Positions 24,201 through 62,522 of a DNA stretch of 64,000 bases are shown here, piece by piece. Made by a program: the position numbers and the translations under genes. Under the pieces are notes generated by a model. The model was not told the DNA's origin and did not search any database. It saw nothing but the letters and a program-made list of their open reading frames with translations. Where the stretch lies: assembly GCF_032444005.1 (NCBI RefSeq), contig NC_091288.1, positions 215,078,001 to 215,142,000 on the forward strand, given 5' to 3'. The stretch is from Ranitomeya imitator. Taxonomy: Eukaryota. Within the stretch, counting starts at the first letter, position 1; every line of letters starts with the position of its first letter.

Positions 24201-24219
24201 TCTCATCATGTATCATACT

Positions 24220-32956: not shown

Positions 32957-34457
32957 TAGTGGGGGAAATAAGTATTTGATCCTTTGCTGATTTTGTACGT
33001 TTGCCCACTGACAAAGACATGAAGAGTCTATAATTTTAAGGGTAGGTCAATTTTAACATTGAGAGATAGAATATCAAAAAATCACATTGTATAAATCTTA
33101 TAAATTTATTTGCATTTTGCAGTGAGAAATAAGTATTTCATCCCTCTGGCAAACCAGACTTAATACTTGGTGGCAAAAACCCTTGTTGGCAAGCACAGCA
33201 GTCGGACGTTCCTTGTAGTTGATGATGAGGTTTGCGCACATGTCAGGAGGAATTTTGGTCCACTCCTCTTTGCAGATCATCTCTAAATCATTAAAATTTT
33301 GAGGCTGTCGCTTGGCAACTCGGAGCTTCAACTCCCTCCATAAGTTTTCTATGGGATTAAGGTCTAGAGACTGGCTAGGACACTCCATTACCTTAATGTG
33401 CTTCTTTTTGAGCCACTCCTTTGTTGCCTTGGCTGTATGTTTTGGGTTATTGTTTTGCTGGAAGATCAAGCCACAACCCATTTTTATCGTCCTGGCAGAG
33501 GGAAAGAGGTTGTCACTCAGGATTTTACGGTACGTGGCTCCATCCATTCTCACATTGATGAGGTGAAGTAGTCCGGTGCCCTTAGCAGAGAAACACCCAC
33601 AAAACATAATGTTCCCACCTCCATGCTTGACAGTGGGGATGGTGTTCTTTATATCATAGGAAGCATTTCTCTTCCTCCAAACATGGTGAGTTGAGTTAAT
33701 GCCAAAGACCTCAATGTTTGTCTCATCTGACCACAGCATCTTATACCAATCACTCACAGAATCATCCAGGTGTTCATTGGGATACTTCAGACGGCCTGCC
33801 CATGTGCCTTTTAGAGCCTTACCTTACCTTACAGGCATTGCAGGATTTTAAACCTTTATAGCGTAATGTGTTGCCAATGGTTTTCTTGGTGACTGTGGTC
33901 CCAGCTGCCTTGAGATCATTAACAAGTCCCCCCCCCCCCCCCGTGTAGTTTTAGGCTGATCTATCACCTTCCTCATGATCAAGGATACCCCACGAGGTGA
34001 GATTTTGCATGGTGCCCCAGATCAATGTCGACTGACAGTCATTTTGTATTTCTTCCATTTTCTTACCATTGCACCAACAGTTGCCTCTTTCTCACCCAGC
34101 ATCTTACTTATGGTTTTGTAGCCAATTCCAGCTTTGTGCAGGTCTATGATCTTGTCTCTGACATCCTTAGAAGGCTCTTTGGTCTTGCCCATGTTGTAGA
34201 GGTTAAAGTCTGACTGATTAATTGAGTCTGTGAACAGGAGACTTTTATACAGGTGACTATGTAAGACAGCTGTCTTTAATGCAGGTAACGAGTTGATTAG
34301 GAGCTTCTAAATGGTCTGTTGGAGCCCGAACTCTTAATGGTTGGTAGGGGATCAAATACTTATTTCTCACTGCAAAATGCAACATTTATATAATTTATTT
34401 AATGCGATTTTCTGGATTTTATTTTTGAGATTCTATCTCTCAACATTAAAATTAACC
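32957..34457 (-). mobile_element. Tc1/mariner (IR/DR type) transposon with a pseudogenised transposase
   Basis: TIR (T)AGTGGGGGAAATAAGTATTTGATC after TA at the left end; inverted copy at 34349-34457 is truncated. Transposase ATG at 34192 (MGKTKE...); motifs [28 protein letters not shown] (catalytic D replaced by N), [11 protein letters not shown]. Stops and frameshifts present, including one just before ...TKY*. Confidence 0.92.
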
Positions 34458-37800: not shown

Positions 37801-39372
37801 TTAGTTAACGATTCTGAGGCAAGAGTCTGGGAATAGATAAAAGGCGAGGTGCAGTGGCTCGGAGAAGGAGGCGGTGAAGGTGTGCAAGTGTCTGATGGGA
37901 TCACACACCTGAACGAAGGACAAACGCCCGGCCTCATAATCCAGATAGATCCCCACAACCCGCACCTGAGGGTCAGAGACCAGCTGTTTAGGAGTATTGT
38001 TATGACGTGCCGTAAAAAAGTAATTTGAACATAATGCCCAAGACTTGTCGTTATACCCAAGGAATGATTCGTTACCCACCACCTTCCTCTCCAGACTTTG
38101 CCCGGCCAATCCTATGAGCCATCTCTCCGCCTGACTAACATCCACCTCCCAGTAATGTCTCCCGGAGGAGACGCTGCAGGAACTAAAGACTTGACGGGAC
38201 TTGAACCTCTTGGGCCCGTTGAGTCTGTTCTGTGATGTAGCAGAATAAGAAGCAGATCTGAGATCTTGTGATATAATAATGTTATTATGGGCCGTATCTA
38301 TATCCAGTAATATGTCCGACTTCTCCATCACTGAGAACTGTCTCTTTATCCTCATAAACATGTCGTCCGAAAAGCGTGCAAGTCCCTGGTGTAAGACCTG
38401 TGAGACTGACATGTGGTTCTGAGTCCCAATGTTCTTCACCTCACCGATGACATCGGGGGTCCTGTGACTGATCCCATCACTTCTGTTCAGCTCCGTCAGG
38501 AAGACGAGAGGGTCGTGGACCTTACACAACTCCTCAGCCTGATGGATCTTAATTGCGAGCTCGTATCTTTGCTTCTCGAGTTCTTGGATTAAGTTGCTGA
38601 TTGGCAACAAGACTTGATTTTCCTGCCTGGAGATCTCACAAAGGACTTTTCTCTCTAATGCGCTCAGTTGATTCCTGAGGTCTTTGAACAAGTAGTGGAC
38701 TCTCTTAGCGATCTCGGTGGACCTCATCTTCTCATCTTTCCTATGATCCTGTAGGTTGTGGACTCTCGTCTCAATGTCCTCCTGCTCAGATGTCAGTTTC
38801 TCCATGATGTTCTCCAATTTCTCCTTCTCTTTCTGAAAGGCCATGTCCAATAGCGCCGCATCATGTCCCTTATGGTCTCCGACCACGCAGCAGGACACAC
38901 ACAGACAGGTAGCGTCTATAGGACAGTAGTATTTCAGCATCTCCTTGTGTGTGGAGCATTTTCTTTCCTCCAGGGTATCAGTGGGGTCAACTAAGGTATG
39001 TTCTGGAGACTTACTGTGTCTGCTTAGGTGTTTTTCACAAAAAGACGCCTCACACTGTAGACATGTTCTTACAGCCGGGGCAGGAGAATCACAGTAAGTA
39101 CAGAAGATCCTGGTCTCCTCCATATCAGGCTGAGTAGATGAGAAACGCTCCACTATGTTCTCAAGCTTCCGGTTCTTCTCCAGGGCCGGACGCTCCGGAT
39201 ATTCTGCTCTGCAGTCAGGACAGGAATACCCTCCAGCCGCCTCCTGTGCATCCAGCACACTCACAATACACGAGCGGCAGAAGTTGTGTCCACATCTCAG
39301 GGATACGGGATCTGTATAGAGGCTCAGGCAGATGGAGCAGTTCAGCTCGTCCCTCAGCTCCGCAGACGCCAT
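37801..39372 (-). CDS. Intronless TRIM E3 ligase (RING, B-box1, B-box2, coiled coil, PRY/SPRY), 523 aa; here TRIM-A
   Basis: C3HC4 RING CSICLSLYTDPVSLRCGHNFCRSC...CPDC, two B-boxes, and B30.2 motifs LDIDTAHNNIIIS, GRHYWEVDV, VGIYLDYEAGRLSF. Single open frame. TRIM25/TRIM16-like architecture; no 1:1 symbol assignable. Confidence 0.95.
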   Translation of the reverse strand: MASAELRDELNCSICLSLYTDPVSLRCGHNFCRSCIVSVLDAQEAAGGYSCPDCRAEYPERPALEKNRKLENIVERFSSTQPDMEETRIFCTYCDSPAPAVRTCLQCEASFCEKHLSRHSKSPEHTLVDPTDTLEERKCSTHKEMLKYYCPIDATCLCVSCCVVGDHKGHDAALLDMAFQKEKEKLENIMEKLTSEQEDIETRVHNLQDHRKDEKMRSTEIAKRVHYLFKDLRNQLSALERKVLCEISRQENQVLLPISNLIQELEKQRYELAIKIHQAEELCKVHDPLVFLTELNRSDGISHRTPDVIGEVKNIGTQNHMSVSQVLHQGLARFSDDMFMRIKRQFSVMEKSDILLDIDTAHNNIIISQDLRSASYSATSQNRLNGPKRFKSRQVFSSCSVSSGRHYWEVDVSQAERWLIGLAGQSLERKVVGNESFLGYNDKSWALCSNYFFTARHNNTPKQLVSDPQVRVVGIYLDYEAGRLSFVQVCDPIRHLHTFTASFSEPLHLAFYLFPDSCLRIVN

Positions 39373-39504
39373 TGTGGTGGGAAAGAGCAGGAAGTGGAAA
39401 AGTTTCTTCCTATAAGAAGGGCGGAGAGTTTCTCCAGAGAAATTAACCCCTACAATAAACCAAAAATGTTGAAGATTATCCCATTTAGATCAGAAAACCC
39501 ATAA

Positions 39505-41129: not shown

Positions 41130-41814
41130 GTTGGGACCTAGGGATTATTTCTTGTTCCTTCATTCACAGTCGGAGCCGCCAGAACTTTCCATCTTACTGC
41201 TGCTCTCTGCCATTGAGAAGACAGAGTCCAACAGACTCCTCCACTGATTCTGCTCCCAGCCTCTCCTCCCACGGCTCCTCAGTTTCCCAGCTCTCCATCC
41301 ATGGCTCCACCACTCCTTTATGTCTTCCTACAACTCCCTAGCTTCCTGCCTCTTCTCTCACTAAACATTTTGTGAGACAAGACACAGACACTTCCTGGGA
41401 GAGCTTTCCTCAAGATTAAAAAAATGACTATTATTTATTTTTTAAAATCCCAACTAGCGATGAGCGAGCCACTATCCGATACTCCATGGAGCGTCGGGGT
41501 GCTCGGGTTCGCTCGTTACTTGATCAAGTATTGCAGGTACTCGAGTCCCCGCCCCACATATTTCGTGGCTGTTAGGGTACGTTCCCACTGTCAGTGTTTG
41601 TTCAGGTTTCACTCAGCTGAATTTACGCATGAATTCCAAACCTCGGCTCACTTGTGTCCTTGCCGCATGTGTTTTTGTTTCTGTTTCGTATGTTAGATTA
41701 GATGTGCAAAGATATAGATAGTCCGCGGCGGGTTAGACACCTCCATTACTAACCCCAGGGCTTGATGCCCGCTGTGATGCACCAATTTTGGGGAAACTTC
41801 CTTCTGAGAATATA

Positions 41815-44470
41815 AGCCCGCAGCTGTCTGCTTCACCTGTGCTGATAATATAAGATTGCAGCTGTCTGCTTTACCTGGGCTGGTAATATAAGATTGCAGC
41901 TGTCTGCTTTACCTGGGCTGATAATATAAGATTGCAGCTGTCTGCTTTACCTGGGCTGATAATATAAGATTGCAGCTGTCTGCTGTACCTGGGCTGATAA
42001 TATAAGATTGCAGCTGTCTGCTTTACCTGGGCTGATAATATAAGATTGCAGCTGTCTGCTTTACCTGGGCTGATAATATAAGATTGCAGCTGTCTGCTGT
42101 ACCTGGGCTGATAATATAAGATTGCAGCTGTCTGCTGTACCTGGGCTGATAATATAAGATTGCAGCTGTCTGCTTTACCTGGGCTGATAATATAAGATTG
42201 CAGCTGTCTGCTTTACCTGGGCTGATAATATAAGATTGCAGCTGTCTGCTTTACCTGGGCTGATAATATAAGATTGCAGCTGTCTGCTTTACCTGGGCTG
42301 ATAATATAAGATTGCAGCTGTCTGCTGTACCTGGGCTGATAATATAAGATTGCAGCTGTCTGCTTTACCTGGGCTGATAATATAAGATTGCAGCTGTCTG
42401 CTTTACCTGGGCTGATAATATAAGATTGCAGCTGTCAACTTTACCATTGCTGGTTATCTAAAATGGGGGGACCCCAAGTTGATCTACTGTCAATGCACCA
42501 ATTTTGGGGCAACTGCCTTCTGAGAATATAAGCCCGCAGCTGTCTGCTTTACCTGGGATGATAATATAAGATTGCAGATGTCTGCTTTACCTGGGCTGAT
42601 AATATAAGATTGCAGCTGTCAACTTTACCATTGCTGGTTATCTAAAATGGGGGGACCCCAAGTTGATCTACTGTCAATGCACCAATTTTGGGGCAACTGC
42701 CTTCTGAGAATATAAGCCCACAGCTGTCTGCTTTACCTGGGATGATAATATAAGATTGCAGCTGTCTGATTTACCTGGGCTGATAATATAAGATTGCAGC
42801 TGTCTGCTATACCTGGGCTGATAATATAAGATTGCAGCTGTCTGCTGTACCTGGGCTGATAATATAAGATTGCAGCTGTCTGCTTTACCTGGGCTGATAA
42901 TATAAGATTGCAGCTGTCTGCTGTACCTGGGCTGATAATATAAGATTGCAGCTGTCTGCTTTACCTGGGCTGATAATATAAGATTGCAGCTGTCTGCTTT
43001 ACCTGGGCTGATAATATAAGATTGCAGCTGTCTGCTTTACCTGGGCTGATAATATAAGATTGCAGCTGTCTGCTTTACCTGGGCTGATAATATAAGATTG
43101 CAGATGTCTGCTTTACCTGGGCTGATAATATAAGTTTGCAGCTGTCTGCTTTACCTGGGCTGATAATATAAGTTTGCAGATGTCTGCTTTACCTGGGCTG
43201 ATAATATAAGTTTGCAGATGTCTGCTTTACCTGGGCTGATAATATAAGTTTGCAGCTGTCAACTTTACCATTGCTGGTTATCTAAAATGGGGGGACCCCA
43301 AGTTGATCTACTGTCAATGCACCAATTTTGGGGCAACTGCCTTCTGAGAATATAAGCCCGCAGCTGTCTGCTTTACCTGGGATGATAATATAAGATTGCA
43401 GATGTCTGCTTTACCTGGGCTGATAATATAAGATTGCAGCGGTCTGCTTTACCTGGGCTGATAATATAAGATTGCAGCTGTCAACTTTACCATTGCTGGT
43501 TATCTAAAATGGGGGGACCCCAAGTTGATCTACTGTCAATGCACCAATTTTGGGGCAACTGCCTTCTGAGAATATAAGCCCACAGCTGTCTGCTTTACCT
43601 GGGATGATAATATAAGATTGCAGCTGTCTGATTTACCTGGGCTGATAATATAAGATTGCAGCTGTCTGCTATACCTGGGCTGATAATATAAGATTGCAGC
43701 TGTCTGCTGTACCTGGGCTGATAATATAAGATTGCAGCTATCTGCTTTACCTGGGCTGATAATATAAGATTGCAGCTGTCTGCTTTACCTGGGCTGATAA
43801 TATAAGATTGCAGCTGTCTGCTGTACCTGGGCTGATAATATAAGATTGCAGCTATCTGCTTTACCTGGGCTGATAATATAAGATTGCAGCTGTCTGCTTT
43901 ACCTGGGCTGATAATATAAGATTGCAGCTGTCTGCTTTACCTGGGCTGATAATATAAGATTACAGCTGTCTGCTTTACCTAGGCTGATAATATAAGATTG
44001 CAGCTGTCTGCTTTACCTGGGCTGATAATATAAGATTGCAGCTGTCTGCTGTACCTGGGCTGATAATATAAGATTGCAGCTGTCTGCTTTACCTGGGCTG
44101 ATAATATAAGATTGCAGCTGTCTGCTGTACCTGGGCTGATAATATAAGATTGCAGCTGTCTGCTTTACCTGGGCTGATAATATAAGATTACAGCGGTCTG
44201 CTTTACCTGGGCTGATAATATAAGATTGCAGGTGTCAACTTTACCATTGCTGGTTATCTAAAATGGGGGGACCCCAAGTTGATCTACTGTCAATGCACCA
44301 ATTTTGGGGCGACTGCCTTCTGAGAATATAAGCCCGCAGCTGTCTGCTTTACCTGGGCTGATAATATAAGATTGCAGCTGTCTGATTTACCTGGGCTGAT
44401 AATATAAGATTGCAGCTGTCTGCTATACCTGGGCTGATAATATAAGATTGCAGCGGTCTGCTTTACCATT
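41815..44470. repeat. 38-bp minisatellite with higher-order interruptions inside a hAT-like element starting at 41455; duplicated at 48583-51238
   Basis: Unit CAGCTGTCTGCTTTACCTGGGCTGATAATATAAGATTG, interrupted five times by a ~100-bp block (TCAACTTTACCATTGCTGG...GAGAATATAAGCCC). The host begins TAGCGATGAGCG; its right end was not found. Confidence 0.92.
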
Positions 44471-45429
44471 ACTGGTTATCAAAAATGGGGGGCCCCAAGT
44501 TGTTTTTTTTTTTTTTCAATTATTTATTAAACAAGTACATTAAATCACACACATAAGAAACTAATTAAATATCTTACGGATATCTATCTATAAATTTGCA
44601 CATCTAATACTTAAACCTATTTTGCATTTTATTCTGGTACGTGTCACACGGATGGCACAGAGATGTCACACCTTGTGTCATCCATGTATGGGACGTGTTG
44701 ACATTCATGCTGCCGGAAAAAATAGACATGAGCGCAGGGTACGTGTGCCAACAGGGGAGTGTTTTCCAGAGATGATGTAATTAGCACAAACAAAAAAGTA
44801 TTTCTATGAAGTTGGACTGTAGTAAAGGACTATCTGACCACTACAGTGGGGACAGTGACTGTAAAGGCAGTGATGAGGTGGCTGAGCCAATGAGGAGGGG
44901 CAGCTGCTGTCACATGGGTCTTCTTGTGATCCCTCCCACAATCCTATTCACTACAACATGGAGACACAAGCGAACCAGAGAACATGGAAAAAAAGTGTTT
45001 ATTATTCAAGTTATTCACTTTAAACATTTTTGTGAACATTTATATCTGTTTAGAAGCTTTTAACAGCAAAGTGTGTTATCGCACAACCCCTTTAGAGCAT
45101 AACAATGGTCGTGGCAGAGGTACGACCACGGTCAGGCCCGGGCAGAAGGGGGTGCGCCGATGCCAGTGTCACCTGGATGTGCATCCTCAGACGTACTGTC
45201 AGGTGAAATGTATTGTGGCACAGAGACATGCTGGCTCCCTGCACTGGAATGCACGCCGCCGGCCAATCAGAGCCAGCAGCAGACGTTTGTCAGTGAAACA
45301 TGGCACATGGCAGTGATGCCATGCGCTGCCCGTAATGGCATGTTGAAGTCAGCTGCCAGCTCCGCTCGGTGTGGGAGAGGAGAAGGTGAGTAGAATCGTT
45401 TGTTTCTTCTTAAAATATCAAGAACAAGA

Positions 45430-46560
45430 ACGGAAGGTGGACCAACATTATACCAGAATTGGGGATATTATACCAGGATGGTGACATTATACCAGGATGG
45501 TGGATATTATACCAGGATGGGGACATTATACCAGGATTGGGGATATTATACCAGGATTGGGGATATTATACCAGGATGGGGACATTATACCAGGATGGGT
45601 GACATTATACCAGGATTGGGGATATTATACCAGGATTGGGACATTATACCAGGATGGGTGACATTATACCAGGATGGTGGATATTATACCAGGATGGCGG
45701 ACCTTATACCAGAATTGGGGACATTATACCAGAATTGGGAATATTATACCAGGATGGGGACATTATACCAGAATTGGGGATATTATACCAGGATGGGGTC
45801 ATTATACCAGGATTGGGGATATTATACCAGGATTGGGACATTATACCAGGATGGGTGACATTATACCAGAATTGGGGATATTATACCAGGATTGGGACAT
45901 TATACCAGGATGGGTGACATTATACCAGAATTGGGGATATTATACCAGGATGGGGACATTATACCAGGATGGTGGATATTATACCAGGATAGGGGACCTT
46001 ATACCAGAATTGGGTAAATTACAATAGCATTAATTGGGGACATTATACCAGAATTGGGAATATTATACCAGGATGGGGACATTATACCAGAATTGGGGAT
46101 ATTATACCAGGATGGGGACATTATACCAGAATTGGGGATATTATACCAGGATGGTGACATTATACCAGAATTTGGGATATCATACCAGGCTGGTGGACAT
46201 TATACCAAAATTGGGGATATTATACCACGATGGGGGACATTATATCAAAAGTGGGGATATTATACCATGATGGGGACATTATTCCAGAATTGGGGATATT
46301 ATACCAGGATGGGGGACATTATGCCAAAATTGGGGATATTATACCAGGATGGGGGACATTATACCAGAATCGGGACTATTATAGCAGCATTGGAGCATTA
46401 TACCAGGATGGGGGACATTATACAAGCACTGGGGACATTATACCAGAATGGGGGATCTTATTCCAGGATGGGGGACATTATACCAGAATTTGGGACATTA
46501 TACCAGAATTGGGGATATTATATCAGCATGGGGGACACTATACCACTATGGGGGGCATCA
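45430..46560. repeat. Degenerate ~19-20-bp minisatellite inside a probable MITE (about 45100-46790); duplicated at 52198-53328
   Basis: GGGGA(C/T)ATTATACCAG(G/A)AT units. The host ends ...TTAGGCCACTG; no TSD found. Confidence 0.85.
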
Positions 46561-47119
46561 TACCAGGAAGGGGCCCTTGATGGGGAAAAAATGTTATAGC
46601 ATTGGGCCAAGGATGGGGGAGATTACTACAAAAAAAGAGTCAGGACAGGGGACATAATTATGGGGAGCAAACGCATGTCTTTATAGGATCTAGACTGCTA
46701 GAAGGGCCCAGACATCTGACCAATGTGCAGGTGGTGGACCAGGTCCAAATTTTACACGAAGGATCACCAGACTATAATTAGGCCACTGAATACGTAGACA
46801 GAGGTGAAAATTACTGGAAACAATAAGGGGATGGAACTTGCAGCTAAATCAAATCTTATGAGGTCGGGGACTAAATATACATTTTTGTATTTCTCTAAAA
46901 ATGTTTTAACTTTATTTTTTTGTTTTGTTTATTTCCAGTAGAGACCATGGAAGCGCAATTCCCTTATTACTGAAATAACGACACGCAAAACTTTGCCTGC
47001 GATTGTGTAACGCTGAGTTGCAGCCCATCGGGCCCAGCCTGCGGTCAGGACAGAATGTTAGATCTAAAAGGGTAAATGATAGAAGATTCACTTTACTGCT
47101 GCAATAATTATCATTCTAA

Positions 47120-48136
47120 TTATTTTATGATTTTCATGACACAATTATCATACAGATGTAAAGCGGCATAGAGCGGCTCGGAGAAGGAGGCGGTGAAGGT
47201 GTGTAAGTGTCTGATGGAGTCACATACACGATAGAAGGACAGACGCCCGGCCTCGTAATCCAGATAGATCCCCACAACCTGCACAGGAGAATCTAATAAC
47301 ATCTGATTATGGATATTGTTATGACTTGCGAAAAGGTTTTTCTCACAAATGATGGCCCACGACTTCTCATTGAAGCCAATAAAAGTTACGTTTTCATTCG
47401 CCTTCCTCTCCAGACTTTCCCCGGCCACCCCTATCATCCAACTACTCGCCTGACTCGCGTCCACCTCCCAGTAATGTCTCCCAGAGGAGAAACTACGGGA
47501 ACCTAGCACTTGACGAGATTTGAACCTTTTGGGCCCATCGGGTCTGTTCTGTGACGTAGCGGTATGAGAAGCAGATCTGAGATCCTGAGATATAATAATG
47601 TTATTCTGAGCCGTGTCTACATCCAGTAATATTTCAGATTTCTCCATCACTGGAAACTCTCTCTTCTTTAGATCCATCAGATTATCGGCAAAGTTCCCCA
47701 GTCCTCCGTGTAATATCTGTGAGACTAGGCCTTCATCCACACACGGAGGACCTCTTACATCACCGATGACCTCACAGCTCCCAGAACTGATGTCACCATG
47801 GCTTAACTCTTCTTGCAGAAAGGTCAGTGGATAAGTGATATTACATAGTCCCTCAAGACTATTCATTTTCTTGGCCAGTTTGTCCACATGAAGCTCTACC
47901 GGTTTGACCAGTTCAGTGACTGATAGTAACACCTGATTCCTCTGTCTGCAAATTTCTCCCTGGATTCTCTTTTCGAGATCATCCAGCTTCTTCCTGAGAT
48001 TTGTAAATAGGAGAGCGACTCTGTCGGTGACTCTGGAAGATTTCTTTCTCTGTTTTGTCCCATGATCCTTTAGATTCTGGATTCTTTTTTCAGCTTCTTC
48101 TCTCCCTAGCTTCCTGCCTCTTCTCTCACTAAACAT
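47120..48136 (-). pseudogene. 5'-truncated duplicate of TRIM-B (partial coiled coil plus complete PRY/SPRY) with a junction-derived in-frame ATG; 338-aa ORF
   Basis: 47120-48103 equals TRIM-B 53888-54871 except one synonymous change seen. The frame stays open across the junction to ATG at 48136-48134 (MFSERRGRKLG|REEAEKRIQ). The track's start at 48181 is TTG. Confidence 0.85.
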
Positions 48137-51100
48137 TTTGTGAGACAAGACACAGACACTTCCTGGGAGAGCTTTCCTCAAGATTAAAAAAATGACTATT
48201 ATTTATTTTTTAAAATCCCAACTAGCGATGAGCGAGCCACTATCCGATACTCCATGGAGCGTCGGGGTGCTCGGGTTCGCTCGTTACTTGATCAAGTATT
48301 GCAGGTACTCGAGTCCCCGCCCCACATATTTCGTGGCTGTTAGGGTACGTTCCCACTGTCAGTGTTTGTTCAGGTTTCACTCAGCTGAATTTACGCATGA
48401 ATTCCAAACCTCGGCTCACTTGTGTCCTTGCCGCATGTGTTTTTGTTTCTGTTTCGTATGTTAGATTAGATGTGCAAAGATATAGATAGTCCGCGGCGGG
48501 TTAGACACCTCCATTACTAACCCCAGGGCTTGATGCCCGCTGTGATGCACCAATTTTGGGGAAACTTCCTTCTGAGAATATAAGCCCGCAGCTGTCTGCT
48601 TCACCTGTGCTGATAATATAAGATTGCAGCTGTCTGCTTTACCTGGGCTGGTAATATAAGATTGCAGCTGTCTGCTTTACCTGGGCTGATAATATAAGAT
48701 TGCAGCTGTCTGCTTTACCTGGGCTGATAATATAAGATTGCAGCTGTCTGCTGTACCTGGGCTGATAATATAAGATTGCAGCTGTCTGCTTTACCTGGGC
48801 TGATAATATAAGATTGCAGCTGTCTGCTTTACCTGGGCTGATAATATAAGATTGCAGCTGTCTGCTGTACCTGGGCTGATAATATAAGATTGCAGCTGTC
48901 TGCTGTACCTGGGCTGATAATATAAGATTGCAGCTGTCTGCTTTACCTGGGCTGATAATATAAGATTGCAGCTGTCTGCTTTACCTGGGCTGATAATATA
49001 AGATTGCAGCTGTCTGCTTTACCTGGGCTGATAATATAAGATTGCAGCTGTCTGCTTTACCTGGGCTGATAATATAAGATTGCAGCTGTCTGCTGTACCT
49101 GGGCTGATAATATAAGATTGCAGCTGTCTGCTTTACCTGGGCTGATAATATAAGATTGCAGCTGTCTGCTTTACCTGGGCTGATAATATAAGATTGCAGC
49201 TGTCAACTTTACCATTGCTGGTTATCTAAAATGGGGGGACCCCAAGTTGATCTACTGTCAATGCACCAATTTTGGGGCAACTGCCTTCTGAGAATATAAG
49301 CCCGCAGCTGTCTGCTTTACCTGGGATGATAATATAAGATTGCAGATGTCTGCTTTACCTGGGCTGATAATATAAGATTGCAGCTGTCAACTTTACCATT
49401 GCTGGTTATCTAAAATGGGGGGACCCCAAGTTGATCTACTGTCAATGCACCAATTTTGGGGCAACTGCCTTCTGAGAATATAAGCCCACAGCTGTCTGCT
49501 TTACCTGGGATGATAATATAAGATTGCAGCTGTCTGATTTACCTGGGCTGATAATATAAGATTGCAGCTGTCTGCTATACCTGGGCTGATAATATAAGAT
49601 TGCAGCTGTCTGCTGTACCTGGGCTGATAATATAAGATTGCAGCTGTCTGCTTTACCTGGGCTGATAATATAAGATTGCAGCTGTCTGCTGTACCTGGGC
49701 TGATAATATAAGATTGCAGCTGTCTGCTTTACCTGGGCTGATAATATAAGATTGCAGCTGTCTGCTTTACCTGGGCTGATAATATAAGATTGCAGCTGTC
49801 TGCTTTACCTGGGCTGATAATATAAGATTGCAGCTGTCTGCTTTACCTGGGCTGATAATATAAGATTGCAGATGTCTGCTTTACCTGGGCTGATAATATA
49901 AGTTTGCAGCTGTCTGCTTTACCTGGGCTGATAATATAAGTTTGCAGATGTCTGCTTTACCTGGGCTGATAATATAAGTTTGCAGATGTCTGCTTTACCT
50001 GGGCTGATAATATAAGTTTGCAGCTGTCAACTTTACCATTGCTGGTTATCTAAAATGGGGGGACCCCAAGTTGATCTACTGTCAATGCACCAATTTTGGG
50101 GCAACTGCCTTCTGAGAATATAAGCCCGCAGCTGTCTGCTTTACCTGGGATGATAATATAAGATTGCAGATGTCTGCTTTACCTGGGCTGATAATATAAG
50201 ATTGCAGCGGTCTGCTTTACCTGGGCTGATAATATAAGATTGCAGCTGTCAACTTTACCATTGCTGGTTATCTAAAATGGGGGGACCCCAAGTTGATCTA
50301 CTGTCAATGCACCAATTTTGGGGCAACTGCCTTCTGAGAATATAAGCCCACAGCTGTCTGCTTTACCTGGGATGATAATATAAGATTGCAGCTGTCTGAT
50401 TTACCTGGGCTGATAATATAAGATTGCAGCTGTCTGCTATACCTGGGCTGATAATATAAGATTGCAGCTGTCTGCTGTACCTGGGCTGATAATATAAGAT
50501 TGCAGCTATCTGCTTTACCTGGGCTGATAATATAAGATTGCAGCTGTCTGCTTTACCTGGGCTGATAATATAAGATTGCAGCTGTCTGCTGTACCTGGGC
50601 TGATAATATAAGATTGCAGCTATCTGCTTTACCTGGGCTGATAATATAAGATTGCAGCTGTCTGCTTTACCTGGGCTGATAATATAAGATTGCAGCTGTC
50701 TGCTTTACCTGGGCTGATAATATAAGATTACAGCTGTCTGCTTTACCTAGGCTGATAATATAAGATTGCAGCTGTCTGCTTTACCTGGGCTGATAATATA
50801 AGATTGCAGCTGTCTGCTGTACCTGGGCTGATAATATAAGATTGCAGCTGTCTGCTTTACCTGGGCTGATAATATAAGATTGCAGCTGTCTGCTGTACCT
50901 GGGCTGATAATATAAGATTGCAGCTGTCTGCTTTACCTGGGCTGATAATATAAGATTACAGCGGTCTGCTTTACCTGGGCTGATAATATAAGATTGCAGG
51001 TGTCAACTTTACCATTGCTGGTTATCTAAAATGGGGGGACCCCAAGTTGATCTACTGTCAATGCACCAATTTTGGGGCGACTGCCTTCTGAGAATATAAG

Positions 51101-53887
51101 CCCGCAGCTGTCTGCTTTACCTGGGCTGATAATATAAGATTGCAGCTGTCTGATTTACCTGGGCTGATAATATAAGATTGCAGCTGTCTGCTATACCTGG
51201 GCTGATAATATAAGATTGCAGCGGTCTGCTTTACCATTACTGGTTATCAAAAATGGGGGGCCCCAAGTTGTTTTTTTTTTTTTTCAATTATTTATTAAAC
51301 AAGTACATTAAATCACACACATAAGAAACTAATTAAATATCTTACGGATATCTATCTATAAATTTGCACATCTAATACTTAAACCTATTTTGCATTTTAT
51401 TCTGGTACGTGTCACACGGATGGCACAGAGATGTCACACCTTGTGTCATCCATGTATGGGACGTGTTGACATTCATGCTGCCGGAAAAAATAGACATGAG
51501 CGCAGGGTACGTGTGCCAACAGGGGAGTGTTTTCCAGAGATGATGTAATTAGCACAAACAAAAAAGTATTTCTATGAAGTTGGACTGTAGTAAAGGACTA
51601 TCTGACCACTACAGTGGGGACAGTGACTGTAAAGGCAGTGATGAGGTGGCTGAGCCAATGAGGAGGGGCAGCTGCTGTCACATGGGTCTTCTTGTGATCC
51701 CTCCCACAATCCTATTCACTACAACATGGAGACACAAGCGAACCAGAGAACATGGAAAAAAAGTGTTTATTATTCAAGTTATTCACTTTAAACATTTTTG
51801 TGAACATTTATATCTGTTTAGAAGCTTTTAACAGCAAAGTGTGTTATCGCACAACCCCTTTAGAGCATAACAATGGTCGTGGCAGAGGTACGACCACGGT
51901 CAGGCCCGGGCAGAAGGGGGTGCGCCGATGCCAGTGTCACCTGGATGTGCATCCTCAGACGTACTGTCAGGTGAAATGTATTGTGGCACAGAGACATGCT
52001 GGCTCCCTGCACTGGAATGCACGCCGCCGGCCAATCAGAGCCAGCAGCAGACGTTTGTCAGTGAAACATGGCACATGGCAGTGATGCCATGCGCTGCCCG
52101 TAATGGCATGTTGAAGTCAGCTGCCAGCTCCGCTCGGTGTGGGAGAGGAGAAGGTGAGTAGAATCGTTTGTTTCTTCTTAAAATATCAAGAACAAGAACG
52201 GAAGGTGGACCAACATTATACCAGAATTGGGGATATTATACCAGGATGGTGACATTATACCAGGATGGTGGATATTATACCAGGATGGGGACATTATACC
52301 AGGATTGGGGATATTATACCAGGATTGGGGATATTATACCAGGATGGGGACATTATACCAGGATGGGTGACATTATACCAGGATTGGGGATATTATACCA
52401 GGATTGGGACATTATACCAGGATGGGTGACATTATACCAGGATGGTGGATATTATACCAGGATGGCGGACCTTATACCAGAATTGGGGACATTATACCAG
52501 AATTGGGAATATTATACCAGGATGGGGACATTATACCAGAATTGGGGATATTATACCAGGATGGGGTCATTATACCAGGATTGGGGATATTATACCAGGA
52601 TTGGGACATTATACCAGGATGGGTGACATTATACCAGAATTGGGGATATTATACCAGGATTGGGACATTATACCAGGATGGGTGACATTATACCAGAATT
52701 GGGGATATTATACCAGGATGGGGACATTATACCAGGATGGTGGATATTATACCAGGATAGGGGACCTTATACCAGAATTGGGTAAATTACAATAGCATTA
52801 ATTGGGGACATTATACCAGAATTGGGAATATTATACCAGGATGGGGACATTATACCAGAATTGGGGATATTATACCAGGATGGGGACATTATACCAGAAT
52901 TGGGGATATTATACCAGGATGGTGACATTATACCAGAATTTGGGATATCATACCAGGCTGGTGGACATTATACCAAAATTGGGGATATTATACCACGATG
53001 GGGGACATTATATCAAAAGTGGGGATATTATACCATGATGGGGACATTATTCCAGAATTGGGGATATTATACCAGGATGGGGGACATTATGCCAAAATTG
53101 GGGATATTATACCAGGATGGGGGACATTATACCAGAATCGGGACTATTATAGCAGCATTGGAGCATTATACCAGGATGGGGGACATTATACAAGCACTGG
53201 GGACATTATACCAGAATGGGGGATCTTATTCCAGGATGGGGGACATTATACCAGAATTTGGGACATTATACCAGAATTGGGGATATTATATCAGCATGGG
53301 GGACACTATACCACTATGGGGGGCATCATACCAGGAAGGGGCCCTTGATGGGGAAAAAATGTTATAGCATTGGGCCAAGGATGGGGGAGATTACTACAAA
53401 AAAAGAGTCAGGACAGGGGACATAATTATGGGGAGCAAACGCATGTCTTTATAGGATCTAGACTGCTAGAAGGGCCCAGACATCTGACCAATGTGCAGGT
53501 GGTGGACCAGGTCCAAATTTTACACGAAGGATCACCAGACTATAATTAGGCCACTGAATACGTAGACAGAGGTGAAAATTACTGGAAACAATAAGGGGAT
53601 GGAACTTGCAGCTAAATCAAATCTTATGAGGTCGGGGACTAAATATACATTTTTGTATTTCTCTAAAAATGTTTTAACTTTATTTTTTTGTTTTGTTTAT
53701 TTCCAGTAGAGACCATGGAAGCGCAATTCCCTTATTACTGAAATAACGACACGCAAAACTTTGCCTGCGATTGTGTAACGCTGAGTTGCAGCCCATCGGG
53801 CCCAGCCTGCGGTCAGGACAGAATGTTAGATCTAAAAGGGTAAATGATAGAAGATTCACTTTACTGCTGCAATAATTATCATTCTAA

Positions 53888-55459
53888 TTATTTTATGATT
53901 TTCATGACACAATTATCATACAGATGTAAAGCGGCATAGAGCGGCTCGGAGAAGGAGGCGGTGAAGGTGTGTAAGTGTCTGATGGAGTCACATACACGAT
54001 AGAAGGACAGACGCCCGGCCTCGTAATCCAGATAGATCCCCACAACCTGCACAGGAGAATCTAATAACATCTGATTATGGATATTGTTATGACTTGCGAA
54101 AAGGTTTTTCTCACAAATGATGGCCCACGACTTCTCATTGAAGCCAATAAAAGTTACGTTTTCATTCGCCTTCCTCTCCAGACTTTCCCCGGCCACCCCT
54201 ATCATCCAACTACTCGCCTGACTCGCGTCCACCTCCCAGTAATGTCTCCCAGAGGAGAAACTACGGGAACCTAGCACTTGACGAGATTTGAACCTTTTGG
54301 GCCCATCGGGTCTGTTCTGTGACGTAGCGGTATGAGAAGCAGATCTGAGATCCTGAGATATAATAATGTTATTCTGAGCCGTGTCTACATCCAGTAATAT
54401 TTCAGATTTCTCCATCACTGGAAACTCTCTCTTCTTTAGATCCATCAGATTATCGGCAAAGTTCCCCAGTCCTCCGTGTAATATCTGTGAGACTAGGCCT
54501 TCATCCACACACGGAGGACCTCTTACATCACCGATGACCTCACAGCTCCCAGAACTGATGTCACCATGGCTTAACTCTTCTTGCAGAAAGGTCAGTGGAT
54601 AAGTGATATTACATAGTCCCTCAAGACTATTCATTTTCTTGGCCAGTTTGTCCACATGAAGCTCTACCGGTTTGACCAGTTCGGTGACTGATAGTAACAC
54701 CTGATTCCTCTGTCTGCAAATTTCTCCCTGGATTCTCTTTTCGAGATCATCCAGCTTCTTCCTGAGATTTGTAAATAGGAGAGCGACTCTGTCGGTGACT
54801 CTGGAAGATTTCTTTCTCTGTTTTGTCCCATGATCCTTTAGATTCTGGATTCTTTTTTCAGCTTCTTCTCTGTTGGATTTAATTTCCTCCAAGACAAATT
54901 GTATTTTCTCCTTCTTCTTCTCAGAGGCCACATCCAGTAGCTCCACATCATGTCCCTTGTGGTCTCCGGCCACCCAGCAGGACACACAGATACAGGCGAC
55001 GTCTATAGGACAGTAGTATTTCAGCATCTCCTTGTGTGTGGAGCATTTTCTTTCCTCCAGGGTATCAGTGGGGTCAACTAAGGTATGTTCTGGTGACTTA
55101 CTGTGTCTGCTTAGGTGTTTTTCACAAAAAGACGCCTCACACTGTAGACATGTTCTTACAGCCGGGGCAGGAGAATCACAGTAAGTACAGAAGATTCTGG
55201 TCTCCTCCATATCAGGCTGAGTAGATGAGAAATGCTCCACTATGTTCCTCAGCTTCCGGTTCTTCTCCAGGGCCGGACGCTCCGGATATTCTGCTCTGCA
55301 GTCAGGACAGGAATACCCTCCAGCCGCCTCCTGTGCATCCAGCACACTCACAATACACGAGCGGCAGAAGTTGTGTCCACATCTCAGGGATACGGGATCT
55401 GTATAGAGGCTCAGGCAGATGGAGCAGTTCAGCTCGTCCCTCAGCTCTGCAGACGCCAT
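53888..55459 (-). CDS. Intronless TRIM E3 ligase (RBBCC-PRY/SPRY), 523 aa; here TRIM-B
   Basis: Start MASAEL at 55459, in the same CCACCACAATG context as the paralogues; the track's upstream extension is probably UTR. All domains intact. Confidence 0.95.
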   Translation of the reverse strand: MASAELRDELNCSICLSLYTDPVSLRCGHNFCRSCIVSVLDAQEAAGGYSCPDCRAEYPERPALEKNRKLRNIVEHFSSTQPDMEETRIFCTYCDSPAPAVRTCLQCEASFCEKHLSRHSKSPEHTLVDPTDTLEERKCSTHKEMLKYYCPIDVACICVSCWVAGDHKGHDVELLDVASEKKKEKIQFVLEEIKSNREEAEKRIQNLKDHGTKQRKKSSRVTDRVALLFTNLRKKLDDLEKRIQGEICRQRNQVLLSVTELVKPVELHVDKLAKKMNSLEGLCNITYPLTFLQEELSHGDISSGSCEVIGDVRGPPCVDEGLVSQILHGGLGNFADNLMDLKKREFPVMEKSEILLDVDTAQNNIIISQDLRSASHTATSQNRPDGPKRFKSRQVLGSRSFSSGRHYWEVDASQASSWMIGVAGESLERKANENVTFIGFNEKSWAIICEKNLFASHNNIHNQMLLDSPVQVVGIYLDYEAGRLSFYRVCDSIRHLHTFTASFSEPLYAALHLYDNCVMKIIK

Positions 55460-55829
55460 TGTGGTGGGAAAGAGCGGGAACCTAAACCTGAAAAGTTTCT
55501 TCACACAAGGGAGGAGGAGGGTTTTTCCATTGCAATTAACCCCTGTAGCTCTGGAAGCAATAGGCACGCACTATATTGTAAATATAGTGGAATGTCTCAG
55601 ATGCCGCAGAACCTCACAATGGAGAACATCCGCTGCTGCGGCTACAGTTAATAGTATGACTAATAAGGCTTCCTAGTGAAGTATGAGAATATTACAAGTC
55701 TCCAACTACGATCTGTACGGATAAGCTCAGCTTGTAAACCTGTACTTTTATGTGATCATGGATCTGATCTGTTTGATGACTTATAATATATTGGAGGGAA
55801 GATGGCTTCACCAGCGAGGATAACAACAT

Positions 55830-57076
55830 CATACACACGACATGACCAAACCGCTGCACGACCAGCTCTACCCTCGCCTACTGTATCCTCACCCATCCCT
55901 TGTAGATTGTGAGCCCTCGCGGGCAGGGTCCTCTCTCCTCCTGTATCCTCACCCATCCCTTGTAGATTGTGAGCCTTCGCGGGCAGGGTCCTCTCTCCTC
56001 CTGTATCCTCACCCATCCCTTGTAGATTGTGAGCCCTCGCGGGCAGGGTCCTCTCTCCTCCTGTATCCTCATCCATCCCTTGTAGATTGTGAGCCCTCGC
56101 GGGCAGGGTCCTCTCTCCACCTGTATCCTCATCCATCCCTTGTAGATTGTGAGCCCACGCGGGCAGGGTCCTCTCTCCACCTGTATCCTCACCCATCCCT
56201 TGTAGATTGTGAGCCCTCGCGGGCAGGGTCCTCTCTCCTCCTGTATCCTCACCCATCCCTTGTAGATTGTGAGCCCTCGCGGGCAGGGTCCTCTCCACCT
56301 GTATCCTCACCCATCCCTTGTAGATTGTGAGCCCTCGCGGGCAGGGTCCTCTCTCCACCTGTATCCTCACCCATCCCTTGTAGATTGTGAGCCCTCGCGG
56401 GCAGGGTCCTCTCTCCACCTGTATCCTCACCCATCCCTTGTAGATTGTGAGCCCTCGCGGGCAGGGTCCTCTCTCCTCCTGTATCCTCACCCATCCCTTG
56501 TAGATTGTGAGCCCTCGCGGGCAGGGTCCTCTCTCCACCTGTATCCTCACCCATCCCTAGTAGATTGTGAGCCCTCGCGGGCAGGGTCCTCTCTCCTCCT
56601 GTATCCTCACCCATCCCTTGTAGATTGTGAGCCCTCACGGGCAGGGTCCTCTCCACCTGTATCCTCACCCATCCCTTGTAGATTGTGAGCCCTCGCGGGC
56701 AGGGTCCTCTCTCCACCTGTATCCTCACCCATCCCTTGTAGATTGTGAGCCCTCGCGGGCAGGGTCCTCTCTCCACCTGTATCCTCACCCATCCCTTGTA
56801 GATTGTGAGCCCTCGCGGGCAGGGTCCTCTCTCCTCCTGTATCCTCACCCATCCCTTGTAGATTGTGAGCCCTCGCGGGCAGGGTCCTCTCTCCACCTGT
56901 ATCCTCACCCATCGCTTGCAGACTGTGAGCCCTCGCGGGCAGGGTCCTCTCTCCTCCTGTACCAGTTATGACTTATATTGTTTAAGATTATTGTACTTGT
57001 TTTTATTATGTATACCCCTCCTCACATGTAAAGCGTCATGGAATAAATGGCGCTATAACAATAAATAATAATAATA
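55830..57076 (+). mobile_element. L2/CR1-type LINE 3' end with an internally amplified 60-bp unit (about 18 copies, 55881-56960)
   Basis: Unit CTGTATCCTCACCCATCCCTTGTAGATTGTGAGCCCTCGCGGGCAGGGTCCTCTCTCC(T/A)C. It is followed by the tail TGTAAAGCGTCATGGAATAAATGGCGCTATAACAATAAATAATAATAATA, typical of amphibian L2 3' ends. Confidence 0.75.
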
Positions 57077-60844: not shown

Positions 60845-62422
60845 TTATTTTATGATTCTGATCGTGCAATTATTATATAGATAGAAAGCGGCATAGAGCG
60901 GCTCGGAGAAGGAGGCAGTGAAGGTGTGTAAGTGTCTGATGGGGTCACACACCTGATAGAAGGACAGACGCCCGGCCTCGTAATCCAGACAGATGCCCAC
61001 AACCTGCACAGGAGAATCTAAAACTAACTTTTTGTGAATATCGTTATGACTTGCATAGCGTTGTTGTTTCTCAGTAATTATGGCCCACGATTTCTCATTA
61101 AAGCCAATAAAAGTTACGTTTTCATTCGCCTTCCTCTCCACACTTTCCCCGGCCACCCCTATCATCCAACTACTCGCCTGACTCACGTCCACCTCCCAGT
61201 AATGTCTCCCGGAGGAGAAGCTGCAAGAATTTAACACTTGACGAGATTTGAACCTCTTGGGCCCATCGGGTCTGTTTTGTGACGTAGCGGAATAATAAGC
61301 AGATCTGAGATCCTGAGATATAATAATGTTATTATGGGCCGTGTCTATATCCAGTAATACTTCCGATTTCTCCATCACTGAGAACTGTCTCTTCAGCTTC
61401 ATATCAATCAGATCATCAGCAAAGTTCCCCAGTCCTCTGTGTAATATCTGTGAGACTAGGCCTTCATCCACACACGGAGGATCTCCTACATCACCGATGA
61501 CCTCACAGCTCCCGTCACTGATGTCACCGGCGTTTACGTCTTGTAGAAAGGTCAGTGGATCAGTGATATTACATAATCCTTCGAGATGATTCATGTCCTT
61601 GGTCAGTTTGTCCACTTGAAGCTCTACCTGTTTGACCAGGTCACAGACTGAACGTAAGACCTGATCCTTCTGTCTGGAAATCTCTCCCTGGATTCTGTTT
61701 TCTAGATCATCCAGCTTCTTCCTGAGATCAGTAAACAGGAGAGCGACTCTGTCACCGAGTCCGGCTGATTTATAACCCTGTTGTGTCCTGTAATACTTCA
61801 GATTCTGGACTCTTATTTCAGTTTCTTCTCTCTTGGACTTTAGTTTCTCCATAACAGGTCTCAGTTTCTCTTTCTTCTTCTCAGAGGCGACATTCAGTGG
61901 CTCAACTTCATGTGCCTTATGGGCTCCGGCCACCCAGCAGGTCACACAGATACAGGCGGCATCTATAGGACAATAATATTTCAGGATCTCATTGTGTGTG
62001 GAGCATTTTCGATCCATAAATGACACCGTAGGTTCAGTTAGATTGTGATTCACCGACTTGTTATGGGCTGCGAGATGTTCCTCACACATGGAGGTCTCAC
62101 AATGAACACAGGATTTCACAGCCGGGACAGGAGACTTTGTACAGTAAGTACAGAAGATCCTGGTCTCCTCCATATCAGGCTGAGTAGATGAGAAACGCTC
62201 CACTATGTTCCTCAGCTTTCGGTTCTTCTCCAGGGCCGGACGCTCCGGATATTCTGCTCTGCAGTCAGGACAGGAATACCCTCCAGCCGCCTCCTGTGCA
62301 TCCAGCACACTCACAATACACGACCGGCAGAAGTTGTGTCCACATCTCAGGGATACGGGGTCTGTATAGAGGCTCAGGCAGATGGAGCAGTTCAGCTCGT
62401 CCCTCAGCTCCGCAGACGCCAT
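60845..62422 (-). CDS. Intronless TRIM E3 ligase (RBBCC-PRY/SPRY), 525 aa; here TRIM-C
   Basis: Start MASAEL at 62422; RING, two B-boxes, coiled coil and B30.2 all intact in one frame. Confidence 0.95.
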   Translation of the reverse strand: MASAELRDELNCSICLSLYTDPVSLRCGHNFCRSCIVSVLDAQEAAGGYSCPDCRAEYPERPALEKNRKLRNIVERFSSTQPDMEETRIFCTYCTKSPVPAVKSCVHCETSMCEEHLAAHNKSVNHNLTEPTVSFMDRKCSTHNEILKYYCPIDAACICVTCWVAGAHKAHEVEPLNVASEKKKEKLRPVMEKLKSKREETEIRVQNLKYYRTQQGYKSAGLGDRVALLFTDLRKKLDDLENRIQGEISRQKDQVLRSVCDLVKQVELQVDKLTKDMNHLEGLCNITDPLTFLQDVNAGDISDGSCEVIGDVGDPPCVDEGLVSQILHRGLGNFADDLIDMKLKRQFSVMEKSEVLLDIDTAHNNIIISQDLRSAYYSATSQNRPDGPKRFKSRQVLNSCSFSSGRHYWEVDVSQASSWMIGVAGESVERKANENVTFIGFNEKSWAIITEKQQRYASHNDIHKKLVLDSPVQVVGICLDYEAGRLSFYQVCDPIRHLHTFTASFSEPLYAAFYLYNNCTIRIIK

Positions 62423-62522
62423 TGTGGTGGGAAATGCAATGTGTGACAGAATAGAAACCAAAAGATAAAAGTTATTTCATACAGGAAGGGTGGAGACTTT
62501 CTGAAGTCAGATTAACCCCTAC

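What the first reader, a model, noticed from the sequence alone, without database searches (positions are those of the whole stretch)
47120..48136. Duplication junction creates a new RING-less TRIM ORF (possible decoy or dominant-negative paralogue)
Seen: the junction fuses 11 codons from formerly non-coding sequence (ATG in ACAAAATG context, A at -3) in frame to the TRIM-B coiled coil and an intact PRY/SPRY. The 338-aa ORF has no RING or B-boxes. A possible acceptor (TGTGTCTTGTCTCACAAAATGTTTAG, AG at 48130-48129) also overlaps the new start. Known: TRIM coiled coils mediate dimerisation, PRY/SPRY binds targets, and RING-less TRIM isoforms can inhibit full-length ones. Inference: if transcribed, by read-through from TRIM-B 6.8 kb upstream or from the hAT end about 90 bp upstream, this is a newborn regulator of an immune E3 ligase. 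Part of the coiled coil is missing, so dimerisation is uncertain.
Basis: partly seen in the sequence, partly recalled or inferred. Interest (0 to 1): 0.75.

Follow-up and report, generated by a model that had tools for sequence, protein, structure and literature searches.

The report
Promoter-less TRIM fragment from young duplication
A near-perfect 6.8-kb tandem duplication in the mimic poison frog assembly copied the back half of an immune-type TRIM gene and left an open 338-codon frame, but the copy has no promoter, was not seen in other frogs' DNA or RNA, and is best read as a very recent gene fragment, not a new regulator.

Summary
In this Ranitomeya imitator window (VGP assembly aRanImi1), 41334-48103 and 48102-54871 are tandem copies with one mismatch in 6,770 bases and a 2-bp microhomology junction. 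The right breakpoint cuts the single-exon gene TRIM-B between codons 196 and 197. The left copy therefore holds codons 197-523, preceded by 11 in-frame codons from former non-coding DNA.

The 338-aa ORF lacks the RING and both B-boxes. It keeps about 80% of the first coiled-coil helix, the hairpin helices and an intact PRY/SPRY. It is already a predicted NCBI/UniRef protein.

The regulator reading is not supported:
- The copy lacks the roughly 90-nt upstream module shared by the three full TRIM genes.
- The only difference between the copies is synonymous.
- In DNA contigs of another frog, sequence reads straight through both parental breakpoints and nothing bridges the junction.
- Contigs of two RNA-like runs reach 48103 and continue into TRIM-B's own upstream codons.
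- No RNA-like run covers 48104-48560, and every run carries the parental G at 47915.

My odds:
- Real, very young, unfixed, silent fragment: about 0.65.
- Assembly artefact: about 0.17.
- Expressed decoy or dominant negative: about 0.08.

The scan had already noted the duplication itself (s1-295077).

The parts
47120..48136 (-). 338-aa ORF (predicted protein P0055): 11 new codons, then TRIM-B codons 197-523, then the stop
   Evidence: Pfam PRY, SPRY and a sub-threshold TRIM_CC match, no RING or B-box
48104..48136 (-). the 11 new N-terminal codons (MFSERRGRKLG), recruited from former non-coding flank; the twin is at 41336-41368
48102..48103 (.). duplication junction with 2-bp microhomology (CT on +, AG on -)
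41334..48101 (.). left copy of the 6,768-bp tandem unit; it holds the truncated TRIM, a 38-bp satellite (41804-44467) and a 20/39/59-bp satellite (45445-46573)
48102..54871 (.). right copy of the unit; it holds the 3' 984 nt of TRIM-B and about 5.8 kb of its downstream flank with the same satellites
53888..55459 (-). parent gene TRIM-B, a single coding exon of 523 aa (P0121): RING, B-box1-like, B-box2, coiled coil, PRY/SPRY
47915..47915 (.). the only difference between the copies (A here, G at 54683); synonymous Thr codon; G in all four public runs laid
55460..55555 (-). conserved module directly upstream of the TRIM-B ATG, shared with TRIM-A and TRIM-C, not duplicated and absent upstream of the truncated ORF
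46916..46938 (-). two AATAAA signals about 190-205 nt after the stop; their twins follow the TRIM-B stop and would have to be ignored for read-through

Best explanation
The ORF is an accidental by-product of a real and very recent 6,768-bp tandem duplication joined by microhomology. The duplication's right breakpoint lies inside the single coding exon of TRIM-B. The left copy received only codons 197-523, without the gene's promoter, 5' leader, RING or B-boxes. An ATG that happened to lie 33 nt upstream in the same frame keeps the frame open.

The duplication is not fixed in the species. The copy has had no time to diverge, nothing shows that it is transcribed, and it most likely does nothing at present. 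It is a nascent pseudogene or gene fragment that an automatic annotation pipeline has called as a protein.

Shown here: the anatomy, the domain content, the lack of the family's upstream module, and the absence of the junction from other individuals' DNA and RNA-like contigs. Inferred: that the junction is real in the sequenced animal, that the copy is silent in carriers, and its age. One change in 6,768 nt gives tens of thousands of years at an assumed 1-2.5e-9 per site per year, with a Poisson range from about a thousand to a few hundred thousand years.
For: - The copies are head to tail with one mismatch in 6,770 nt and a sharp 2-bp microhomology junction in unique sequence.
- Residues 12-338 equal TRIM-B 197-523 exactly, and the one DNA difference is synonymous.
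- TRIM-A, TRIM-B and TRIM-C share motifs directly upstream of the ATG. The truncated copy's upstream sequence does not align to them.
- In the DNA run X1, a 478-nt contig runs from 47756 through 48103 and on for 127 nt of other sequence. A 566-nt contig runs from 48485 through 48102 and on for 174 nt. These two contigs account for all the depth in the junction bin, so there is no branch to the junction.
- Contigs of X3 and X7 end at 48103 and continue with the reverse complement of QFVLEEIKSN, which is TRIM-B's own upstream codons. None of X3, X7 or X11 covers 48104-48560. All four runs show G at 47915.
- The exact 338-aa protein is on record only on the assembly's own chromosome, and its 90% cluster holds only it and TRIM-B.
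- The assembly is a VGP product, a pipeline built to limit false duplications (PMC9516828, title and abstract listed).
Against: - I could not see the reads the assembly was made from, so the junction has no support independent of the assembly.
- The RNA-like runs probably come from non-carriers and cover even TRIM-B thinly (contig depth 3-5). They cannot show silence in a carrier.
- NCBI's pipeline did call a gene here, although reads from TRIM-B map equally well to the identical copy.
- An A/T-rich stretch lies roughly 60-80 nt upstream of the ATG, so a cryptic promoter cannot be excluded.
- The start context has A at -3, and the frame is fully open.
Confidence: 0.65

Rival explanations
1. 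Assembly artefact: the animal has one copy of the 6.8-kb unit, and the assembler placed it twice in tandem. The A/G difference at 47915 would then be a heterozygous site or a consensus error, and the ORF would not exist in any frog.
For: The copies are 99.985% identical. No junction was found in another individual's DNA contigs or in any other run. The unit carries 2.7 kb and 1.1 kb of satellite arrays, which are hard to assemble. False duplications are a documented error class (PMC9516828, listed).
Against: The junction lies in unique sequence, is sharp and has 2-bp microhomology, as real tandem duplications do. A false haplotype duplication should differ at the roughly 0.3-0.9% level seen between this haplotype and X1 (2 to 3 differences per 350-600 nt), not at 0.015%. 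From my own knowledge: the unit is shorter than typical HiFi reads, so a false junction would need several chimeric reads with the same breakpoint.
Confidence: 0.17
2. One reading: the copy is transcribed, either from a cryptic start near 48170-48230 or by read-through from TRIM-B. It is translated from the new ATG, and the RING-less, B-box-less protein pairs with TRIM-B through the remaining coiled coil or soaks up its PRY/SPRY ligands. It would then act as a dominant negative or decoy.
For: - The ORF is intact, with A at -3.
- 87 of the 109 residues of H1, plus H2, H3 and the whole PRY/SPRY, are kept.
- A coiled-coil plus B30.2 fragment of TRIM20 is a dimer on its own (PMC4455283).
- TRIML2 is a fixed paralogue lacking the RING and B-box that is described as a negative regulator (PMC6993854).
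- The pipeline annotated the ORF.
Against: - No promoter module is present.
- Read-through would have to pass two AATAAA signals and 3.8 kb of satellites, and would carry five upstream ATGs in the last 380 nt.
- No RNA-like contig lies on 48104-48560 or bridges the junction, and only G is seen at 47915.
- The duplication is not fixed, so no selection can be read.
- The lost 22 residues include the N-terminal part of H1. In TRIM20 the residues near that end form the terminal two-helix contact.
Confidence: 0.08
3. The copy is real and weakly transcribed as noise (read-through or pervasive transcription) but has no effect on TRIM-B. The RNA or protein would be unstable or too scarce to matter.
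For: The X3 contig over 46600-47062 passes both AATAAA signals. If X3 is RNA, transcripts from this locus can run on beyond them.
Against: There is no depth at all over 48118-48560 in X3, X7 or X11. Whether X3 is RNA or DNA is not on record.
Confidence: 0.1

Closest known systems
Partial (5'-truncated) gene copies made by microhomology-mediated tandem duplication within fast-turnover class IV TRIM clusters
   Same: Head-to-tail copies, a 2-bp microhomology junction, one breakpoint inside a gene, and a promoter-less 3' fragment sitting in a tandem array of three full single-exon RING/B-box/CC/PRY-SPRY genes.
   Different: It is caught almost at birth, with one substitution. The frame happens to stay open through a recruited ATG, so it is annotated as a protein and not as a pseudogene.
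TRIML2 (eutherian TRIM-like protein lacking RING and B-box)
   Same: The architecture is coiled coil plus PRY/SPRY only, and it derives from a RING-bearing TRIM by duplication. It is proposed to act as a negative regulator and not as a ligase (PMC6993854).
   Different: TRIML2 is fixed across eutherians, expressed in placenta and testis, and shows selection signatures. The frog ORF is unfixed, identical to its parent and has no expression evidence.
TRIM20/pyrin coiled-coil plus B30.2 fragment (PDB 4CG4)
   Same: The same domain content. The fragment dimerises antiparallel through helix 1 and the hairpin helices (PMC4455283). The pyrin B30.2 is among the best sequence matches in the PDB.
   Different: The crystallised fragment starts at the first residue of helix 1. 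The frog ORF lacks the first 22 residues of that helix and carries 11 unrelated residues in their place.
RING-less TRIM-like proteins annotated in other frogs (about 438-442 aa with B-box, PRY and SPRY, for example in Engystomops and Bufo)
   Same: They are N-terminally shortened members of the same anuran TRIM expansion that appear in automatic annotation (P0094, P0101, P0109, P0115).
   Different: They keep the B-box and are 60-65% identical to TRIM-B, so they are independent and older. I did not examine them further.

Membership tests
Class IV (C-IV) TRIM / RBCC-B30.2 E3 ligases | N-terminal RING finger | tested here: not met
   Pfam finds several RING models in TRIM-B (residues 12-58) and none in the 338-aa ORF. 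The ORF starts at parent residue 197.
Class IV (C-IV) TRIM / RBCC-B30.2 E3 ligases | B-box zinc finger(s) | tested here: not met
   zf-B_box matches at 136-174 and a B-box1-like match at 91-124 in the parent. There is none in the ORF.
Class IV (C-IV) TRIM / RBCC-B30.2 E3 ligases | Coiled-coil hairpin (H1, H2, H3) | tested here: inconclusive
   TRIM_CC scores 24.3 bits, below the cut-off of 30, and covers profile positions 2-98. The AF2 model of the parent has H1 at 175-283, H2 at 288-298 and H3 at 320-345. The ORF keeps 197-283 of H1 and all of H2 and H3. Dimerisation was not testable.
Class IV (C-IV) TRIM / RBCC-B30.2 E3 ligases | C-terminal PRY/SPRY (B30.2) | tested here: met
   PRY 5e-12 and SPRY 1e-17, both above the cut-offs. 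PDB matches to B30.2 domains of BTN3A, pyrin, TRIM14, TRIM11, TRIM7 and TRIM21 at 1e-21 to 4e-29.
Established RING-less TRIM-like regulators (TRIML2 type) | Fixed and conserved in the lineage | tested here: not met
   Contigs of another individual's DNA read through both parental breakpoints with no junction. No second protein carrying the junction is in the 15-billion-protein collection.
Established RING-less TRIM-like regulators (TRIML2 type) | Expressed as its own transcript | tested here: inconclusive
   There is no junction contig and no coverage of 48104-48560 in three RNA-like runs. These samples probably lack the duplication, and their kind is only guessed.
Dominant-negative TRIM isoforms | Pairs with the full-length protein through the coiled coil | not testable with these tools
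   Only monomer prediction is available. 80% of H1 is retained.
Microhomology-mediated tandem segmental duplication | Two head-to-tail copies with a sharp junction and short microhomology | tested here: met
   41334-48103 = 48102-54871, with a 2-bp overlap and identity ending exactly at both ends.
Microhomology-mediated tandem segmental duplication | Junction supported by reads independent of the assembly | tested here: not met
   It is absent from X1 DNA contigs and from X3, X7 and X11. The reference animal's own reads were not available, so this shows the duplication is not fixed. It does not show that the junction is false.

The most novel reading that the evidence does not exclude
The duplication is a real structural variant segregating in Ranitomeya imitator. 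In carriers the fragment is transcribed from a cryptic start just upstream and makes a coiled-coil plus PRY/SPRY protein that pairs with TRIM-B or competes for its ligands. That would be a dominant-negative or decoy TRIM caught at the moment of birth, with carriers and non-carriers available for comparison.
Probability: 0.07. Interest if true: 0.6.

Novelty: new member of a known kind. Interest (0 to 1): 0.2.

Why it matters
As it stands this matters mainly as a caution. An automatically annotated 338-aa 'TRIM-like' protein in the reference annotation of a model poison frog is most likely a promoter-less fragment from a private or low-frequency duplication, or possibly an assembly error. It should not be counted as a gene in TRIM family censuses.

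If the junction proves real and expressed in carriers, it would be a rare natural case in which the first step of making a RING-less TRIM paralogue (as happened for TRIML2) can be studied within one species.

Tried and rejected
- hAT-driven transcription. The upstream 435 nt has no other copy in the window and no terminal inverted repeat. It sits at single-copy depth in X1 up to about 48447. I found no support and dropped it as a mechanism.
- Inherited promoter. The three full genes here share a GAAGAAACTTTTC-type motif and two other blocks, but none matches a strict GAAANNGAAA core within 160 nt of the ATG. The truncated copy has none of the blocks.
- Exact-protein look-ups for transcript-derived copies. 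P0055 and P0121 occur only on the assembly chromosome. This says little, because one amino-acid polymorphism hides a match.
- Papers on the assembly. I found no dedicated description, only its use as a VGP/RefSeq reference.
- A second word search with the 338-aa protein was not run. The first search and the cluster look-up already cover proteins of that length and identity.
- The big representative search was not needed, and structure search was not needed for the verdict.
- The bacterial promoter/terminator scanner does not apply to a frog.
- Splice-site strength of the proposed acceptor was judged by eye only.

Full report
**Where this is.** The exact 338-aa protein and the parent protein are both called on chromosome record CM064365.1 of GCA_032444005.1, at about 215.12-215.14 Mb. 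The closest relatives are dendrobatid and other hyloid frog TRIM proteins. A 2026 preprint (10.64898/2026.07.13.737953) names GCF_032444005.1 as the annotated Ranitomeya imitator genome aRanImi1 and cites the VGP paper for it. The window has no N runs.

**The observation.**
- Self-BLAST of the window finds 41334-48103 = 48102-54871, 6,770 nt at 99.985% identity. Identity ends exactly at both ends. The two copies overlap by two bases (CT on +, AG on -), and the only mismatch is A at 47915 against G at 54683.
- The parent, TRIM-B, is a single open frame at 53888-55459 (-) of 523 aa. It has a RING, a B-box1-like match, B-box2, a coiled coil, PRY and SPRY.
- The right breakpoint falls between its codons 196 and 197. 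The left copy therefore holds codons 197-523, preceded on the minus strand by the start of the right copy. That sequence is the twin of the non-coding flank at 41336 onwards.
- An ATG at 48136 lies in frame 33 nt upstream. This gives 11 new residues followed by 327 residues identical to TRIM-B 197-523. The one DNA difference is a synonymous third position (ACT against ACC, Thr).
- Pfam finds PRY (5e-12), SPRY (1e-17) and a sub-threshold TRIM_CC match in the ORF, and no RING or B-box.

**How much coiled coil is left.** An AlphaFold2 model of TRIM-B was built with 48 homologues. Its mean pLDDT is 76, and about 70-89 along the long helix. It places H1 at 175-283, H2 at 288-298, H3 at 320-345 and the PRY/SPRY from about 355.
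- The ORF loses H1 residues 175-196, which is 22 of 109 (20%). It keeps the rest of H1 and all of H2 and H3.
- In the TRIM20 coiled-coil/B30.2 crystal structure the fragment is a dimer in solution. The dimer is antiparallel along helix 1, with a central four-helix bundle. Terminal two-helix contacts join residues near the start of helix 1 to residues near the end of the partner's helix 1 (PMC4455283).
- By analogy, which is inference, the frog fragment would keep the central bundle and lose one terminal contact per truncated chain. Pairing with TRIM-B is plausible but untested.

**Can it be transcribed?**
- The three full genes are TRIM-A (60845-62422), TRIM-B and TRIM-C (37801-39372), all on the minus strand. 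They share sequence blocks directly upstream of the ATG: GGGGTTAAT, a GAAGAAACTTTTC-type block and CCCACCACA.
- The truncated copy's upstream sequence has none of these blocks and gives no BLAST match to the TRIM-B upstream region. The fragment therefore inherited no promoter or leader.
- Read-through from TRIM-B would have to pass two AATAAA signals about 190-205 nt after its stop (twins of 46933 and 46916). It would also have to cross a 1.1-kb and a 2.7-kb satellite array.
- Such a leader would carry upstream ATGs at 48514, 48436, 48398, 48327 and 48255.
- An A/T-rich stretch lies roughly 60-80 nt upstream of the ATG. A cryptic start cannot be ruled out from sequence alone.
- The hAT idea found no support. 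The upstream 435 nt has only its twin in the window and no terminal inverted repeat. In another frog's DNA it lies at depth 7.8-10.7, against 4.8-6.5 over neighbouring unique sequence, up to about 48447. Beyond that a high-copy repeat begins, at depth 600-3,400.

**Public reads.** A search with 47900-48310 found no run on record as RNA. It found two DNA-like runs of one sample holding 80% of the words, and smaller runs of the same species holding 25-36%. I laid 46600-48560 on X1 (DNA-like) and on X3, X7 and X11 (small contig sets, RNA-like by guess), which come from four studies. All are contigs, so they show presence and not level.
- X1, right breakpoint: a 478-nt contig covers 47756-48103 and runs on for 127 letters that do not fit the window.
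- X1, left breakpoint: a 566-nt contig covers 48485-48102 and runs on for 174 letters that do not fit.
- X1, junction bin: the depth of 5.7 in bin 48052-48117 is what these two contigs alone give. Nothing bridges 48103/48104, and the assembly graph had no branch there.
- X1 also differs from the window at 46914, 47025, 47819 and 47833 and by an 8-bp insertion after 48236. It is therefore another haplotype or individual.
- X3 and X7: contigs of 393 and 340 nt reach 48103 and continue with letters whose reverse complement reads QFVLEEIKSN, which is TRIM-B residues 187-196. They are full-length TRIM-B sequence.
- X3, X7 and X11 have no depth anywhere in 48118-48560.
- All four runs show G at 47915, the allele of the parent copy. 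A is therefore the derived state, private to the truncated copy.
- What this shows: the duplication is not fixed in the species, and nothing in public data shows the junction as DNA or RNA.
- What it does not show: that the junction is false, or that a carrier would keep the copy silent. These samples probably lack the duplication, and they cover even TRIM-B thinly (contig depth 3-5).

**Annotation status.** The 338-aa sequence is already in NCBI and UniRef as a predicted protein. It is the representative of a 90% cluster whose only other member is TRIM-B. It is called as a gene between TRIM-B and TRIM-C. Because the copy is identical to TRIM-B over 984 nt, RNA reads and protein alignments from TRIM-B support a model here equally well. 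That is inference, and it means the annotation is not independent evidence of expression.

**Real or artefact.**
- For a real variant:
  - The junction is sharp, carries microhomology and lies in unique sequence.
  - The two copies differ far less (0.015%) than this haplotype differs from X1 (roughly 0.3-0.9% over the pieces laid). That argues against two haplotypes having been placed in tandem.
  - The assembly comes from a pipeline designed to limit false duplications.
- For an artefact: the near-identity of the copies, the satellites inside the unit, and the lack of any independent junction read.
- I put a real variant at about 0.8 and an artefact at about 0.17-0.2.

**What it most likely is.** It is a very young, unfixed, promoter-less partial duplicate of TRIM-B. 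Its frame is open by chance, and no selection can yet be read from it. With one change in 6,768 nt and an assumed neutral rate of 1-2.5e-9 per site per year, the age is tens of thousands of years. The Poisson range runs from about a thousand to a few hundred thousand years (inference).

[quoted passage not shown] Here it lacks every piece of evidence that would lift it above possibility.

**Comparison and novelty.**
[quoted passage not shown] It meets the B30.2 feature and keeps most of the coiled coil.
- It is a TRIM-derived fragment, not a TRIM.
- It is a new member of a known kind: partial tandem duplicates in fast-turnover immune gene clusters.
- Interest is low, about 0.2. It is somewhat higher if the junction is confirmed as a segregating variant and found expressed.

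**Earlier notes of this scan.** The duplication itself had been noted (s1-295077), and I confirmed it. A note on ISRE-like elements upstream of other TRIM genes (s1-279752) prompted the upstream comparison.

Noticed in passing
window 62423-62520, 55460-55555, 39373-39470 (minus strand): The three full TRIM genes share conserved blocks directly upstream of the ATG (GGGGTTAAT, a GAAGAAACTTTTC-type block, CCCACCACA) while the sequence further upstream is unrelated. This is a candidate shared core promoter or leader, possibly interferon-responsive. No strict GAAANNGAAA core lies within 160 nt of the ATG.
   Followed up: partly
window 48236: The DNA run X1 carries an 8-bp insertion (CGAGCTCA) after 48236 relative to the window, plus SNPs at 46914, 47025, 47751, 47819 and 47833. 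X3 and X7 share some of these. Both window copies carry the same alternative alleles, so the duplication arose on, or was assembled from, one haplotype.
   Followed up: partly
window 41804-44467 (= 48572-51235), 45445-46573 (= 52213-53341), 55873-56961, 19031-24219: There are four large satellite arrays. A 38-bp unit repeats about 71 times. A 20/39/59-bp unit spans 1.1 kb. A 60-bp unit (358-bp higher order) at 96-97% identity lies just upstream of TRIM-B. An array with a period of about 41 bp spans 5.2 kb. The start of the 38-bp array is very high copy in X1 (depth 600-3,400).
   Followed up: no
window 47175-47224: Contig depth in all four runs jumps to 90-1,100 over the SPRY stretch that encodes the conserved LDYEAGRLSFY-type motif. 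Many paralogues share this stretch at 95% identity or more, which would confound any short-read expression estimate for single TRIM genes.
   Followed up: no
window 46600-47062: A contig of X3 covers the region downstream of the stop and passes both AATAAA signals (46933, 46916). Either the TRIM-B 3' UTR is longer than these signals suggest, or X3 holds genomic DNA or pre-mRNA.
   Followed up: no
window 33098-33739 (-), 28392-29540 (+): There is a Tc1/mariner-like transposase fragment ORF ([13 protein letters not shown]...) and a 382-aa ORF that looks like a leucine-rich repeat protein. Neither was examined.
   Followed up: no
one search hits P0094, P0101, P0109 (Engystomops), P0115 (Bufo): Other frogs have annotated RING-less members of this TRIM expansion (about 440 aa, with B-box, PRY and SPRY). 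N-terminal truncation recurs in this family or in its annotation.
   Followed up: no
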